Positions 590 to 17,015 are shown, counted from the stretch's first letter. The stretch is DNA of 64,000 bases from Vitrella brassicaformis CCMP3155 (GCA_001179505.1 CDMY01000444.1:11636-75635); one strand, 5' to 3'. A program made the numbers and translations. The notes: generated by a model not told the origin, from the sequence alone.

Positions 590-1040
590 AGAAGCAGGGC
601 ACGTTGGACAGTATCCCCGAGGACCTCCACACCACCATCAACATGACCATGAGCACCAGCCACGTATGTGCAGTGTGCATCAACACACGCATGTCCTGTA
701 CACGTGTGGCTGTGTTTGTAGGGTTTGTGCAGCCAGACGGTGCCCTTGTTGCCGGGCGGACGGATCGTCGGTGCGGTGAGCGCACACACACACGCAAAGA
801 AATAAATGGATGGGTGTGTGGCTGCTGCCTGCCTGCTGTGTGTTGTCAGCGTGTCGTCAAGACGCACATCTCCTCCCACTACTTGATGCCCAAGGTGAGT
901 GAGTCAACCGACAACCAAACCTCCTCGCACACGCATGCATGGCTGCACGGCACACTTACGTACCGCTTCTCTGGTTCGCTCCTTGTGTGTGGTTGACCAG
1001 GTCGTGGCGCATCGCATATACCTACCCACTGGCCGCTGTA
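590..1040 (+). pseudogene. Highly degenerate MAT central-domain remnant (3 exons)
   Basis: Spliced exons KQGTLDSIPEDLHTTINMT / RVVKTHISSHYLMPK / VVAHRIYLPTGR loosely align by eye to MAT KNGTLPWLRPDxKTQVTVEY ... IxPxxxPxxYL...INPTGRF. Weak alignment. Confidence 0.4.
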
Positions 1041-1597
1041 AGATGCACACACAGACAGACAGGTTGCCATTGATTCGTGTGTGTGTGCAGGGGCAGCGCC
1101 AAGCACGAAGGCCTGCTGCAGATGATAGACTAGAGGGCATGTGGATGGACATCGTGTACGACATCGGCAGGAAAGAGATGGCACTCAAAAACGGTACAAA
1201 ACAGAGAGAGACGAGGGGAGGTACAGTAGTCCACTTGCTCAAGGCTGACACCGACACGACACCCCTGCACATCCGTTTCTTGTGGCGTGCTGTGCATGCT
1301 TTACCACCCATGCAGTCAGGTTGCTCAAGGACCGACGGACGCGGAGCAGCCTCACCACCCACACAGGACTCCGAGTAGCCTCACCACACACACACACACG
1401 AGGTACGTGCATGTGGGAGGCAGAGAGGGAGAGAGGGAGGGAGGGAGGGGCTTCAGTGCGGGTCAGTCATATGTTCTTGCTGTCTGTGGTGTGGTGTGTT
1501 GGTCTTGTTCAGATTGGTGCCATGTACGAGCGACACTTGAGCCTCGAGGGCACGTGTTGACGTCGGCCTCGCCGGCGGCCCACAGCCCATCGCCCGG

Positions 1598-1935
1598 CTG
1601 CTTCCTCGTCACCTCGGAGGCGGTCACCCTGGGCCACCCCGACAAACTCTGCGACGTGGTAGCGGACGCCGTTGTGGACGAGTGCAAGGCTTTGGACGCC
1701 GAGGCCCTGGCGAACGTCAAGGGTCACCTGCCTCGGTAAGTGTCACTCACTCCCCGCACCTCACTGCACCAGCGGCACTGCACCAGCGGCATGTGCGTGT
1801 TTGTCGGCTGTCTTGCAGGAACGGTCATGGTGTGTGGCAAGCTGCGATGCAGAGAAGTCGTGGAGCTGGGCTTCGACGACGCGACAAAGGAACTCGACTA
1901 CCGCACCATGAAGGTCTTCAACGCCCCACAGATCT
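1598..1935 (+). pseudogene. S-adenosylmethionine synthetase (MAT) N-terminal domain remnant, copy 1
   Basis: [28 protein letters not shown] (GHPDK at 1632-1646) matches MAT FTSESVxEGHPDKxCDxxxDAxLD. After an intron (GT at 1735) comes GTVMVCG...ELGFDDATKELDYRTMKV, matching MAT GMVMVFG...EIGYDDxxKGxDYKTCxV. No GAGDQG or later motifs follow. Confidence 0.8.
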
Positions 1936-2107
1936 CCCGAACCCTTCGGCGACCTTCTTTGGAGCTCTTCTTTCGTCTGTTTTTCTTTCTTTTTGCGCTT
2001 GGTGGGCGCTTCAAGGCAGCCAAACGATCCCAACCGTCCTTCTTCCGTTCCCGACGTTCCCTTTCGCCTCCAACACCTCTCCGAAGGCATTCGACGCCGC
2101 CACACTC

Positions 2108-2310
2108 ACCATCAGGCAGGTGAGGAGCACCCCACACAGCACCAGTAGGCCAGAAGTGACGGGCCGCAGCCAGAAGGGCGCGCAACTCATAACACGGGGG
2201 CAGAGAGGCGAGTGTGTCGACTGAGGGTGAGAGAGGGCGTGGTGGTGGCGTGTGAAGTCTGGCGTGGAGGACGGAGAGCCAGGCTGACGTGCTGGGAGGG
2301 AGGGGAGGGA
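2108..2310. repeat. ~200-bp dispersed repeat (copies at ~2108-2310, ~4505-4612 partial, ~13895-14090)
   Basis: Near-identical text CAGGTGAGGAGCACCCCACACAGCACCAGTAGGCCAGAAGTGACGGGCCGCAGCCAG...GGAGAGCCAGGCTGACGTGCTGGGAGGGAGG at these positions. Confidence 0.9.
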
Positions 2311-3124
2311 GGGAGGGATGCCAGTGGGTGCGGTGGGTGACCCTCCGTCCTGCCTCCAGCTGTGTGTGGTGTGGTGGGTGTGTGAACAGGTCTTTCGCGG
2401 CCCCTGTTGGTTGTGCGCGCACCCCTGTTTGCATCTCCTCCCGTCTCGAGTCCCCCCCACCGCACCAACAGCCGCCGCACCACCCACCGCCGCAACCACC
2501 AGTACTCTCGCTGAGGCGGCACACCTCACACCTCCTCGACAACACTACCCTCCCGCAAGAACGGCAACCGACGGGACATCGACAGAGGCGAACATCGACA
2601 GAGGTGCAAGTGAGGAGAAAGAGGGAGAGAGGGGGGAAGCGACAGACAGACAGACAGACAGACAGAGAGGTGGCAGATCTGTGCTGTGTGTGGTGTGTGG
2701 TGCGTTGGCCTCGTGCAGGGAGATGGATACCTTGAGAGGACTCGACCTGTGTGGGCGTTCGGATCATCTTTCCTCTCCATATCGCCACGCCACACCCGCA
2801 AGGCTCTCAGACCCACGAGGTACACACCACACCCAAGAGAGAGAGGGAGGGGTGGAGTCCTGCCTGATATCCTTCTCGCTGCCATTGTGTGTGTGGCATC
2901 TCTCTCTCTCTCTCTCTTGGCATCTCATCCACACGAAACATCCACATGTGTGTGTCTCGTGTCTGTTTCGTTCGCATGTGCAGCACCAGGCATCGTTCGA
3001 CGGCAGTGGCGAGGCCAAGAAGGTCGCTGAGGGGACAGCAGAGGCCCGGCGCGTAAGCACACTCACTCACAGAGACACTGGCGGTTCCTATGATCATGTT
3101 TTACATGTCTGTGTGTGTGGGTGG

Positions 3125-14894: not shown

Positions 14895-15355
14895 GCGGCT
14901 CCTTCCTCTTCACCGCCTCGGCAGTCACCGAGGGCCACCCGACAAAATGTGCGACTGCGTTTCCGACGCCGTGCTCGATGCCTGCCTGAAGCAAGACCGC
15001 TACGCCCTCACGTCAGTCAACACCGTGTGCACTCCCAACGGTGAGCAGCGCTACACACGATACGCCTACCTACCGACCTACCTACCTACCCACTTTGTGG
15101 TGCGTTGTGGTGTGTTGTGTTGTGTGTGTTGCAGGGTTGGTCATGTCTTGGGGAACCGTCATGAAGCGCTTCCAGTACCCGCCAGAGCCGGATGTGCACG
15201 TGGGCTACGCCGAGGTGATGCGCCAGACGCTGAGGGAGATCGGGTACGACAGCGGCGCAAAGGGCCTCGACTACACGTGCGTGAGGATTGTGGCCGACAT
15301 TAAGCACAACGTCGATTACGTCGGGGATGTGGAGTTCAGCGGCAACAGGAAGTGA
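14895..15355 (+). pseudogene. MAT N-terminal domain remnant, copy 2, with a 1-nt frameshift inside GHPDK
   Basis: SFLFTASAVTEGH then CAC-CC-GAC (one C short at ~14940, versus CAC CCC GAC in copy 1), then DKMCDCVSDAVLDACLKQD. The next exon GLVMSWG...VGYAEVMRQTLREIGYDSGAKGLDYTCVRIVADI is a strong MAT match and stops at 15353-15355. Confidence 0.85.
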
Positions 15356-15989
15356 GACCGGCTCATGAGTGACACACGACACAAGAAAGCGGTGGAAGCG
15401 ATGTTGACGGCAGCGCTCTTTGTCTTGAGGCCGTGCGTTTCGTCGTTTGCTAAGATCCTCACCAGAAGACTCACCAGCAGAGATGCACGTGTCTTGTTCC
15501 ATTGTTGGTCGTGCTGCAGGGACGGTGATAGTGGAATTCGGAGAATCATCAAATCATCGACTACGGGAACAGCGGACAAGAAGTTGACAAAGAAGGAGGA
15601 ACGGTAGGAACAAGCCCATCACGAAGTTCAGAGCTTACAGACACGTGTCTCCTTCAGACATCGCTGCCTATGTTTTATATCCGGAGGCCGTGTTTCTTAT
15701 TGCGGCGGACCAAGGTAGGATGATTCATCGAAATGCAAGTGTGCTGGTGTGTGCAGGGACCGTGGCGACGTGAGGCGCCCCGAGGTGGGACGGCTGAGGC
15801 CCGGAAGGCAGATGAGGACGAGGAGGTGGGAAGGAGAGAGGGAGTGAGGGAGTGAGGGAGCGATGTCGACGGCAGTGCTCTTTGTCTTGTGGATGTCATG
15901 TGGCTAATGTAGGGCCACCCTGTTGATGACACTCAACACCACACTCACAGGTAACCAATTGACCATCCGTGAAGGAGCAGACGGGTACT

Positions 15990-16705
15990 TCTGGCTGCTG
16001 CTTTCTGTCTGTGCAGAGTACCGCAAGCGCTACCTGGATATCGTCGACAACATTCGCACCAACGAGCTGCAAATCGCGCTGGGTACAATAAAGAGACAGC
16101 GACTCTTCTACTGTACATAACGCATTGCGTCTTGTCTGATGCTTTCCGCACACAGACGAGCGGCAGAGACGTAGACGCCAGTTGGAGAGCGGTACGCATG
16201 ACAACCCAATAACACGCCCTCACTGGTGTGTGCCGATGGATGGTGTTTTCGTTCGTGTCTTGTCTTCGATTTAGATGTGACTGCTGCGTTGAAGGCCGAG
16301 AGGAAGGCTAAGTTCGATGATGAGGCTGGTATGCAGCCCTTTTTTCTGTTTTTTTGCACCCATCGGGTGCATTCGAGCACATCAACGTTCCCAGCGTTCA
16401 TCTCGAGGGCTTTCTAGTGCGCTTTTCCGGCAAGGATTTCCGGTCTGAACTCGAGCACGCACCTCTGCACTCGGAATCAGGAGCCAGACCTCGACCTTCT
16501 CGCGACACAAATACTACACGATCTGGGCACTCAGCTGAAGATTGACGCCGACCACATCACCGTCAAGAAGGCCTCCCACACGTCAAGAAGGCATTTGACG
16601 ACACCCCGGAGCTGATGCCTTTGGCTCAGTCGCTGGCTGACAAGTTGGGCAAGCGGCTCACTGACGTCAGGAACGACAGTCAGTGACACCACACACACAA
16701 ACACA

Positions 16706-16742
<37 letters not shown>

Positions 16743-17015
16743 GCAGAGAGATAGAGAGATAGACTGACACTGACAAGACGTACAAACAGGTGCCTGCCTG
16801 CCTGCCTGCCTGCTGCTGTGCTCACCTGCCTGGTGTGTGTGTGTGTGTGTGTGTGTCCGCCTGTAGGCACTCTGGCTTATCTGCACCCCGCAGGCAAGGC
16901 GACGGTGACGGTTGAGTACGACCAGGCGGAGGGCGCGACTGCACGCGGTACGCCCCGGTCGTACAAGGAAGACATCCTCAAGACACTCAGGGAAGAGCGG
17001 ACAAGAAGTTGACAA
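15990..17015 (+). pseudogene. Paralog of the 4700-6272 gene with a MAT central-domain remnant
   Basis: DDTPELMPLAQSLADKLGKRLTDVRND (~16600-16678) and TLAYLHPAGKATVTVEYDQ (16866-16925) match the MAT central domain. The frame is disrupted just upstream of DTPELMP. Confidence 0.75.

What the first reader, a model, noticed from the sequence alone, without database searches (positions are those of the whole stretch)
590..16930. Array of up to eight degenerate SAM-synthetase (MAT) domain remnants fused to unrelated exons
Seen in sequence: MAT N-domain pieces at ~1598, ~5640 and ~14895; clear central-domain pieces at ~5930 and ~16600; weaker central-domain tails at ~590, ~3740 and ~11415. They keep introns, have diverged strongly from each other at the protein level and sit next to coiled-coil or low-complexity exons. 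Established: active MAT needs GHPDK, GAGDQG, TGRK and GGGAFSGKD. Only GHPDK survives (intact in one copy, frameshifted in the other), and no C-terminal domain is present. Inference: either an expanding family of MAT-fold pseudo-enzymes (SAM/Met sensors or MAT regulators) or a factory of captured gene fragments being reshuffled.
Basis: partly seen in the sequence, partly recalled or inferred. Interest (0 to 1): 0.75.

Follow-up and report, generated by a model that had tools for sequence, protein, structure and literature searches.

The report
Decaying partial copies of SAM synthetase gene
This stretch of the alga Vitrella brassicaformis holds four broken, intron-keeping partial copies of the front half of its SAM-synthetase gene inside a duplicated, repeat-rich region; they look like relics of an old duplicate, not working enzymes or sensors.

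Summary
The organism is Vitrella brassicaformis CCMP3155. Its intact 8-exon MAT gene, with all four catalytic motifs, lies on another contig (C289).

Observation: partly confirmed.
- Five of the eight listed places are truly MAT-derived. They form four partial units: A (exons 1-2), B (exons 2-4'), C1 (exons 1-2) and C2 (exons 3-4').
- These units keep the parent's intron positions and phases.
- No C-terminal domain is present. GHPDK is intact in A and frameshifted in C1.
- The three "weak tails" (~590, ~3740, ~11415) are not detectably MAT. At or near them lie copies of an unrelated 69-nt exon-like repeat.
- The assembly gap is a scaffolding artefact with a 26-nt overlap and hides nothing.

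Interpretation: not supported as a live pseudo-enzyme family.
- Every unit carries a frameshift, a truncation or a lost start codon.
- Two spliced RNA assemblies cover the neighbouring gene but not unit C.
- Neither protein search (A exon 1, 83-262 aa; B exon 3, 78-248 aa) nor the exhaustive search with B exon 2' found a predicted protein holding these exons.
- The recent A/C1 tract evolves neutrally.

Older divergence looks coding-like (omega 0.4-0.6, mostly in-frame indels, no stops). The copies therefore probably descend from a once-constrained paralogue, or were patched by gene conversion.

The scan noted another MAT-like gene in this genome on contig C370. This finding is ordinary, of modest interest.

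The parts
823..897 (+). Copy 1 of a 69-nt exon-like repeat (reads roughly R-V-x-x-x-I-S-S-H-Y-L-x-P-K). Not demonstrably MAT.
1523..1559 (+). Unit A: ATG homologous to C1's start codon. Here it is one base out of frame with exon 1 (GGG versus GGGG in C1) and runs into a TGA.
   Evidence: Not checked against reads.
1575..1722 (+). Unit A, MAT exon 1 with intact GHPDK (1632-1646). GT donor at 1723, phase 1 as in the parent.
   Evidence: Pfam N domain 44.6 bits; 61% identity to the genome's MAT exon 1
1819..1946 (+). Unit A, MAT exon 2 with two in-frame deletions. In frame with exon 1. No exon 3 follows.
   Evidence: tblastn E 2e-5
3125..3424 (.). Assembly gap. Its flanks 3099-3124 and 3425-3450 are identical, so it is a scaffolding artefact.
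3992..4066 (+).
5044..5097 (+). Exon-like segment X: 54 nt, phase 1-1, AG/GT kept. It stands where exon 1 would be in unit B. Copies lie at 16275-16330 and on C289.
   Evidence: no Pfam hit
5639..5797 (+). Unit B, diverged MAT exon 2' with AG/GT and phase kept.
   Evidence: tblastn E 0.002; no Pfam hit; no relative in 1.84 billion representative proteins except a spurious repeat hit
5931..6044 (+). Unit B, MAT exon 3. The GAGDQG motif is lost; the rest is 63% identical to the parent.
   Evidence: Pfam central domain 28.4 bits
6121..6250 (+). Unit B, exon 4'. It is MAT-derived up to 6228. A 38-nt deletion changes the frame at ~6190. A 42-nt patch (6187-6228) is 93% identical to the parent gene. 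The last 22 nt and the donor belong to the repeated 'tail' sequence.
6235..6511 (+). 'Tail' repeat after unit B. It carries a 28-nt motif that occurs in at least 43 places in the genome.
11406..11480 (+).
11824..12018 (+). Unit D: remnant of the 3' end of exon 4' (11824-11876) plus a tail. The same remnant occurs twice on contig C287.
14822..15040 (+). Unit C1, MAT exon 1 with an in-frame ATG at 14822. A frameshift (loss of one C) at 14938-14941 lies inside GHPDK. GT donor at 15041.
   Evidence: Pfam N domain 15.1 + 41.5 bits; DNA contigs show no indel
15135..15352 (+). Unit C1, MAT exon 2 with an 8-residue in-frame insertion. It is followed by a tail (15560-15863) instead of exons 3-4.
   Evidence: Pfam 20.5 bits
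16275..16545 (+). Unit C2: copy of segment X (16275-16330), then a broken exon 2'' remnant that switches frame and ends in a stop.
   Evidence: no Pfam hit
16576..16678 (+). Unit C2, MAT exon 3, truncated at its 5' end. GAGDQG is lost; 71% identical to the parent.
   Evidence: Pfam central domain 25 bits
16867..17012 (+). Unit C2, exon 4' with a net 11-residue deletion, ending in TGA at 17010. It is followed by a tail (16985-17274).
   Evidence: Pfam 14 bits, E 0.055

Best explanation
These are relics of an old partial duplicate of the Vitrella SAM-synthetase (MAT) gene. The duplicate was copied at the DNA level, with its introns, and covered only exons 1 to about the middle of exon 4.

Proposed history (inferred):
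- The duplicate was re-duplicated locally together with flanking sequence. The result is four partial units: A and C1 (exons 1-2), and B and C2 (a foreign 54-nt segment X, then exons 2-4').
- Internal deletions, insertions of repeats and unequal exchange broke the units apart.
- Blocks of the same region were also copied to contigs C287, C289, C677 and C929. There only a 50-nt scrap of exon 4' survives.
- For much of their history the copies changed as coding sequence does. Either they once made a protein, or they were repeatedly patched by gene conversion from the working gene.

Present state:
- Today each unit carries a disabling lesion and lacks more than half of the enzyme.
- Unit C, the one tested, gives no assembled transcript.
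- The units most likely do nothing. SAM synthesis rests on the intact gene on contig C289.

Shown: the homology, intron positions, lesions, paralogous blocks, and missing RNA contigs for C. Inferred: the order of events and the earlier period of constraint.
For: 1. Genome-wide six-frame Pfam scans find MAT N, central and C domains complete only at C289:66161-67783. Partial N and central hits lie only in this window, and no C domain lies here.
2. The parent gene has all four catalytic motifs.
3. The exon pieces are 54-71% identical to the parent exons. They keep the parent's exon order, strand, intron positions and phase-1 junctions.
4. Lesions:
   - the frameshift in C1's GHPDK is confirmed by contigs of two DNA runs;
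   - A's ATG is out of frame;
   - B has a 38-nt frame-changing deletion in exon 4';
   - C2's exon 2'' is broken and its exon 3 is truncated;
   - GAGDQG is absent from B and C2.
5. RNA-derived contigs of two runs cover the minus-strand gene at 18733-20165, with three CT..AC (GT..AG on the minus strand) introns. They cover nothing between 14900 and 17100.
6. No predicted protein of 83-262 aa holds A exon 1, none of 78-248 aa holds B exon 3, and an exhaustive search with B exon 2' found only a spurious repeat match.
7. The recently exchanged tract 1223-1672 / 14378-14972 (88-94% identical) is no better conserved in exon 1 than upstream of it. There omega is 1.3, with a wide CI.
8. The region is a mosaic of segmental duplicates. 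Window 2887-13990 matches C287:121056-130024 at 75-96%. Most indels are not multiples of 3, 38 of 54.
9. No Pfam domain was found in 27 neighbouring ORFs.
10. In E. coli MAT, Arg229 belongs to the structural 'N-terminal domain' (PMC3853416). The structural domains therefore need sequence from the missing second half.
Against: - The older divergence is not neutral-looking. Omega is 0.58 (CI 0.33-0.99) for A vs C1 and 0.39 (0.17-0.81) for B vs C2. Third-codon-position differences are about twice those at first and second positions in exons 3-4'.
- About 8 of about 13 indels relative to the parent are in-frame, counted by eye from the alignments.
- None of the delimited exons has a stop. The probability is 0.02-0.14 per unit if all divergence were neutral. 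My exon limits were partly chosen as stop-free, which biases this estimate.
- In unit B the chain X, 2', 3, 4' is in frame throughout with canonical AG/GT sites.
- Contigs cannot prove absence of a rare transcript.
Confidence: 0.62

Rival explanations
1. The fragments were dead on arrival. A 5' piece of the MAT gene was copied once into non-coding DNA and never encoded anything. The coding-like pattern (omega below 1, few stops, in-frame indels) comes from repeated gene conversion by the working gene, and from my choice of alignable, stop-free segments.
For: - A 42-nt patch in B exon 4' is 93% identical to the parent, while neighbouring exons are 63-71% identical. This mosaic is what conversion produces.
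- That patch is read out of the MAT frame.
- The A/C1 tract shows that local exchange is active.
- No promoter homology to the parent was seen. Detected DNA homology to the parent is confined to exon pieces; in unit A it begins inside exon 1.
Against: - B and C2 share derived residues and the foreign segment X, yet differ from each other as much as each differs from the parent, with a third-position excess. Conversion from the parent alone does not easily explain this.
- Splice sites and phases are kept in all four units.
Confidence: 0.2
2. At least one unit is alive, most plausibly B (segment X, then exons 2', 3 and 4'). It would be part of a chimeric gene encoding a non-catalytic MAT-derived module.
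For: - The four-exon chain in B is in frame with canonical splice sites. It reads into the same frame as the homologous mini-exon of unit D.
- Omega is 0.39 for B vs C2.
- The exons are stop-free.
- Vitrella has another diverged MAT-like gene on C370.
Against: - No predicted protein in 1.84 billion representatives holds B exon 2', and none of 78-248 aa holds B exon 3.
- The sister unit C2 is broken and has no RNA contigs.
- The MAT-homologous end of exon 4' is read out of frame.
- The mini-exon differs by a 1-nt indel between paralogues.
- The fragment stops near MAT residue 170, although the MAT fold interleaves both halves of the chain (PMC3853416).
- The flanking ORFs have no Pfam domain.
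Confidence: 0.1
3. A transposon of the Helitron or Pack-MULE kind captured MAT gene fragments with their introns and multiplied them.
For: - The fragments keep introns and abut repeated segments.
- All five 'tails' carry a 28-nt motif found at least 43 times across the genome and never in the reversed-pattern control.
- Related blocks lie on four other contigs.
Against: - The only inverted repeats are microsatellites, so there are no terminal inverted repeats.
- No transposase, Rep or helicase domain was found in the ORFs tested.
- Around the 28-nt motif the flanks are not conserved between unrelated loci.
- MAT exons 1-3 occur only in this window, in parental order and orientation.
- The other blocks share the same exon 4' scrap, which points to deletion from a common ancestor, not independent capture.
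Confidence: 0.05
4. The copies are assembly artefacts, such as collapsed or duplicated haplotigs or mis-joins.
For: There is a spurious 300-N gap with overlapping flanks at 3125-3424. The assembly is fragmented, with 1064 contigs.
Against: - The copies differ by 30-50% in their exons, far beyond allelic variation.
- Logan contigs of two DNA runs from two studies reproduce 14680-16682 without differences. A separate contig reproduces unit A's version of the shared tract.
Confidence: 0.02

Closest known systems
Unprocessed (duplicated) pseudogene fragments in segmental duplications
   Same: - A functional parent exists in the same genome.
- Introns are kept at parental positions.
- The copy is truncated.
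- The copies carry frameshifts and deletions.
- They are embedded in locally re-duplicated, repeat-rich DNA.
- The tested unit has no assembled transcript.
   Different: The older part of the divergence looks constrained: omega is 0.4-0.6, indels are mostly in frame, and splice phases are kept in all units. That is more than a typical dead-on-arrival fragment shows.
S-adenosylmethionine synthetase (MAT; Pfam PF00438, PF02772, PF02773), for example the intact Vitrella gene at C289:66161-67783
   Same: Exons 1-4' are clearly homologous (54-71% identity). They have the same intron positions, and one copy has an intact GHPDK.
   Different: - There is no C-terminal domain and no second half of the central domain.
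- GAGDQG, TGRK and GGGAFSGKD are absent.
- Reading frames are interrupted.
- The central-domain scores fall below Pfam's cut-off.
Dead-paralogue regulators of enzymes, for example the trypanosomatid AdoMetDC prozyme (from my own knowledge), and the diverged MAT-like gene of Vitrella on contig C370
   Same: They are paralogues of a SAM-pathway enzyme that have lost catalytic residues. The C370 gene shows that Vitrella does keep a diverged MAT-like copy.
   Different: Those are full-length, expressed open genes. C370 carries exon 1-, 4-, 6- and 7-like pieces. The units here are front halves only, are broken, and are closer to the working MAT than to the C370 gene.
Gene fragments captured by Helitrons or Pack-MULEs in plants (from my own knowledge)
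   Same: Intron-bearing gene fragments lie next to unrelated exon-like pieces and are multiplied.
   Different: No element termini or transposon protein domains were found in the ORFs tested, and there are no dispersed near-identical MAT-carrying copies.

Membership tests
S-adenosylmethionine synthetase (MAT) | N-terminal domain profile match (PF00438) over the curated cut-off of 33.1 bits | tested here: met
   A exon 1 scores 44.6 bits and the C1 exon 1 second part scores 41.5 bits. The exon 2 pieces are below the cut-off (20.5 bits) or give no hit.
S-adenosylmethionine synthetase (MAT) | Central domain profile match (PF02772) over the cut-off of 29 bits, full length | tested here: not met
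   Scores are 28.4, 25.0 and 14.0 bits, and B exon 4' gives no hit. Only profile positions 10-63 of 120 are covered.
S-adenosylmethionine synthetase (MAT) | C-terminal domain (PF02773) | tested here: not met
   No match at E<=1 on contig C444. The genome's hits lie only on C289 and, weakly, on C370.
S-adenosylmethionine synthetase (MAT) | Catalytic motifs GHPDK, GAGDQG, TGRK and GGGAFSGKD in one open frame | tested here: not met
   GHPDK is intact only in A and frameshifted in C1. GAGDQG is replaced in B and deleted in C2. The exons that carry the other two motifs are absent. All four motifs are present in the C289 gene.
Unprocessed (duplicated) pseudogene | Homology to a functional parent gene with parental intron positions retained | tested here: met
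Unprocessed (duplicated) pseudogene | Disabling lesions (frameshift, truncation, lost start) | tested here: met
   Lesions are present in all four units. C1's frameshift is confirmed in DNA contigs. A's lesion was not checked against reads.
Unprocessed (duplicated) pseudogene | No expression | tested here: inconclusive
   Unit C has no contig in two RNA-derived assemblies that do cover the neighbouring gene, but contigs cannot prove absence. Units A and B were not tested.
Unprocessed (duplicated) pseudogene | Neutral evolution (omega about 1, equal change at the three codon positions) | tested here: inconclusive
   The recent A/C1 tract gives omega 1.3. The older divergence gives omega 0.39-0.68 with a third-position excess in exons 3-4'.
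Pseudo-enzyme retained by selection | Open, fold-competent reading frame that is expressed | tested here: not met
   - The frames are interrupted, and only about the first 170 of about 400 residues are present.
- Unit C has no RNA contigs.
- The searches with A exon 1, B exon 3 and B exon 2' found no predicted protein.
Pseudo-enzyme retained by selection | Orthologues conserved in related species | not testable with these tools
   No chromerid or other alveolate genome was searchable here, because the genome collections hold bacteria and archaea. B exon 2' has no relative in 1.84 billion representative proteins.
Transposon-captured gene fragments | Element termini (TIRs or Helitron ends) and/or transposon proteins; dispersed copies carrying the fragment | tested here: not met
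   The only inverted repeats are microsatellites. The ORFs tested have no transposon domains. MAT exons occur only in this window.

The most novel reading that the evidence does not exclude
Unit B (segment X plus exons 2', 3 and 4', in frame with canonical splice sites) is a live product of exon shuffling. It would encode a small non-catalytic MAT-derived module. Together with the diverged MAT-like gene on contig C370, Vitrella would then have a lineage-specific family of MAT-derived proteins, possibly SAM/methionine binders or MAT partners.
Probability: 0.08. Interest if true: 0.6.

Novelty: new member of a known kind. Interest (0 to 1): 0.28.

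Why it matters
Mostly housekeeping. These stretches should be annotated as MAT pseudogene fragments, not as genes. The 300-N gap can be closed.

There is one modest point of interest. Vitrella carries an intact MAT, a diverged MAT-like gene on C370, and this decaying cluster. The cluster's coding-like older divergence suggests that a second MAT paralogue was once in use and then lost. 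That gives a small case study of paralogue birth, partial duplication, gene conversion and decay in a chromerid genome. If unit B proved to be expressed, it would become an example of exon shuffling from a core metabolic enzyme.

Tried and rejected
1. Three 'weak tails' as MAT remnants: rejected.
   - No Pfam hit at E<=10.
   - No nhmmer hit of a six-copy profile of the nearby 69-nt repeat against the MAT genes.
   - Alignment scores are at shuffle level.
2. Hidden exon in the assembly gap: rejected. The flanks overlap by 26 nt, and the C287 paralogue is continuous.
3. A 'GHP' string in the mini-exon at 11824 as an exon 1 remnant: rejected. It aligns with B's exon 4' 3' end instead.
4. Weak C-domain-like tblastn hits judged to be chance:
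   - exon 6-like at 22174-22245, E 0.24;
   - exon 8-like at 62301-62366 on the minus strand, E 0.007;
   - exon 7-like on C929 and C289, E 0.005 and 0.048.
   Pfam PF02773 finds nothing there.
6. Word searches for predicted proteins holding A exon 1 or B exon 3: both blank.
7. The exhaustive search with B exon 2' gave one hit, P0006 (3737 aa). It is a spurious match to an 18-residue repeat.
8. Pfam on 27 neighbouring ORFs on both strands found no domain: 7, 10, 10. The 'coiled-coil exons' therefore remain unverified.
9. Rfam on the whole window: nothing.
10. Literature searches for Vitrella plus MAT: no paper.
11. Steps not done:
   - Exon statistics were pooled only as counts or for a stop-codon simulation.

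Full report
**Source and parent gene**

The window is C444:11636-75635 of a 72.7-Mb, 1064-contig eukaryotic assembly. Annotated proteins of neighbouring genes name the organism as Vitrella brassicaformis CCMP3155.

I ran six-frame Pfam scans of the whole genome with the three MAT domains. They find one complete gene, at C289:66161-67783 on the minus strand. It has eight exons and carries GHPDK, GAGDQG, TGRK and GGGAFSGKD. Partial N and central-domain hits occur only in this window. One weak C-domain hit lies on C370.

**What is in the window**

I ran tblastn with the eight parental exon peptides, Pfam on stop-free pieces, and three-frame reading. Together they give four partial units, all on the plus strand:

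| Unit | Pieces | State |
|---|---|---|
| A | exon 1 (1575-1722), exon 2 (1819-1946) | GHPDK intact; two in-frame deletions in exon 2 |
| B | exon-like segment X (5044-5097), exon 2' (5639-5797), exon 3 (5931-6044), exon 4' (6121-6250) | X is foreign; exon 4' is MAT-derived up to 6228 |
| C1 | exon 1 (14822-15040), exon 2 (15135-15352) | in-frame ATG at 14822 |
| C2 | X (16275-16330), exon 2'' remnant, exon 3 (16576-16678), exon 4' (16867-17012) | exon 2'' broken; exon 3 truncated at its 5' end |

- Identity to the parental exons is 54-71% for exons 1, 3 and 4', and lower for exon 2.
- The exon 1|2, 2|3 and 3|4 junctions sit at the parental positions. They have GT/AG and phase 1. So these are DNA-level copies, not retrocopies.
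- Nothing beyond the middle of exon 4 is present. Exons 5-8, the rest of the central domain and the C domain are all missing.

**The three 'weaker tails'**

- They have no Pfam hit at E<=10.
- Their alignment to MAT exon 4 is no better than shuffles.
- At or near them lies a different element: a 69-nt exon-like segment flanked by AG and GTGAG. It is present three times here and three times on C287. Its profile does not hit the MAT genes.
- A genuine extra scrap of exon 4' lies at 11824-11876 and twice on C287.

Five of the eight listed places are therefore MAT-derived.

**The assembly gap**

The 26 nt before the gap (3099-3124) are identical to the 26 nt after it (3425-3450). The paralogous sequence on C287 runs through with a single copy. 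The gap is a scaffolding artefact between overlapping contig ends. It lies 1.2 kb from the nearest MAT exon, so frame continuity across it does not arise.

**Lesions**

- **C1.** One C has been lost from a C run inside GHPDK (14938-14941). Contigs assembled independently from two DNA runs of two studies cover 14680/14797-15060 with no difference.
- **A.** The ATG that is in frame in C1 is one base out of frame here (GGG versus GGGG) and meets a TGA. This was not checked against reads.
- **B.** A 38-nt deletion in exon 4' shifts the frame. As a result, a 42-nt patch that is 93% identical to the parent is read out of the MAT frame.
- **C2.** Exon 2'' switches frame and ends in a stop. Exon 3 has lost its 5' end, including GAGDQG. 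B has lost GAGDQG as well.

**Expression and annotation**

- Two small runs proved to be RNA-derived. Their contigs skip three introns with CT..AC ends in a minus-strand BTB-like gene at 18733-20165.
- They have no contig between 14900 and 17100, which covers all of C1 and C2. Their only touches nearby are microsatellite ends. Contigs cannot prove silence.
- No predicted protein of 83-262 aa holds A exon 1, and none of 78-248 aa holds B exon 3.
- An exhaustive phmmer search of 1.84 billion representatives with B exon 2' found only a spurious match to an 18-residue repeat in a 3737-aa protein.
- The public annotation of the locus could not be fetched.

**Context**

The MAT pieces sit in a mosaic of segmental duplicates.

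- Window 2887-13990 matches C287:121056-130024 at 75-96%. Further blocks lie on C289 (about 48 kb from the real MAT), C677 and C929.
- These blocks lack MAT exons 1-3 but share the exon 4' scrap. This points to deletion from a MAT-bearing ancestor.
- Between paralogues, 38 of 54 indels are not multiples of three, and mismatches show no codon periodicity.
- Each MAT unit ends in a 'tail' repeat (6235, 11859, 13556, 15560, 16985). The tails carry a 28-nt motif that occurs at least 43 times in the genome and never in the reversed control. The flanks of the motif are not conserved between unrelated loci.
- The only inverted repeats are microsatellites.
- None of the 27 neighbouring ORFs has a Pfam domain. 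Rfam finds nothing.
- The 'coiled-coil or low-complexity exons' are therefore unverified. Part of them is a ~650-bp tandem repeat at 6801-8260.

**Mode of evolution**

Codon counts were pooled over exons.

| Comparison | Omega | 95% CI |
|---|---|---|
| A vs C1 | 0.58 | 0.33-0.99 |
| B vs C2 | 0.39 | 0.17-0.81 |
| Copies vs parent | 0.28-0.72 | not pooled |

- For B vs C2, differences at the three codon positions are 0.26 / 0.26 / 0.56.
- About 8 of about 13 indels relative to the parent are in-frame (counted by eye from the alignments).
- None of the delimited exons has a stop. The probability is 0.02-0.14 per unit if all divergence were neutral. My exon limits favour stop-free stretches.
- In contrast, the tract 1223-1672 / 14378-14972 is 88-94% identical. 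It is no better conserved in exon 1 than upstream of it. Omega there is 1.3, with a wide interval, and each copy has a private 1-nt frameshift.

My reading is a long period of coding-like constraint, or patching by gene conversion from the working gene, followed by recent neutral decay.

**Why a functional half-MAT is unlikely**

In E. coli MAT, Arg229 belongs to the structural 'N-terminal domain', Gln98 to the central domain and Lys269 to the C-terminal domain (PMC3853416). The three structural domains are thus built from both halves of the chain. A fragment ending near residue 170 lacks parts of each domain. This is an inference and was not tested by folding.

**Relation to earlier notes**

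I located MAT-like exons 1, 4, 6 and 7 at about C370:18100-19400 on the minus strand. The copies in this window are much closer to the working MAT than to that gene.

**Verdict**

This is a cluster of unprocessed MAT pseudogene fragments in a segmentally duplicated region. They are probably relics of a once-used paralogue. The pseudo-enzyme reading is not supported for the present state. A live chimeric unit B remains possible at about 10%.

Noticed in passing
window 6304-6331, 11932-11959, 13622-13649, 15655-15682, 17080-17107; at least 43 places genome-wide, for example eight on C527: A 28-nt motif (CAGAYATCGCTNNCTAYRTTTTATATCC) recurs across many contigs. The reversed-pattern control gives no match, and the flanks are not conserved between unrelated loci. 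It could be a short dispersed element or a cis-signal of unknown role. Rfam gives no match.
   Followed up: partly
G000:C370 about 18100-19400, minus strand (L009 5112-6393): A third, strongly diverged MAT-like gene with exon 1-, 4-, 6- and 7-like pieces.
   Followed up: partly
window 20094-21443 and 21780-23103, plus strand: Two tandem RING-CH (PF12906) membrane-protein genes (P0001, P0004), with paralogues on C287 and C289 (P0002, P0003, P0005). The three contigs therefore share larger paralogous blocks.
   Followed up: partly
window 18733-20165, minus strand: A BTB-like gene that is expressed. RNA-derived contigs skip three introns at 19281-19360, 19388-19477 and 19639-19731.
   Followed up: partly
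window 6801-8260: A tandem repeat of a ~650-bp unit, with two full units and one partial unit at 79-83% identity. It is rich in Q/E-coding triplets and is also present on C287.
   Followed up: partly
window 823-897, 3992-4066, 11406-11480; C287 three copies: A 69-nt exon-like segment with conserved AG and GTGAG borders in most of its six paralogous copies. Segment X (54 nt, phase 1-1) is conserved at 5044-5097, 16275-16330 and on C289. The duplicated blocks may derive from an unidentified multi-exon gene.
   Followed up: partly
window 14482-14653: Unit C1 carries a 172-nt stretch where unit A has 29 other bases. A DNA contig with A's version was laid on C by the read tool and shows up there as a 'joint'. 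This is a paralogue, not a polymorphism.
   Followed up: yes
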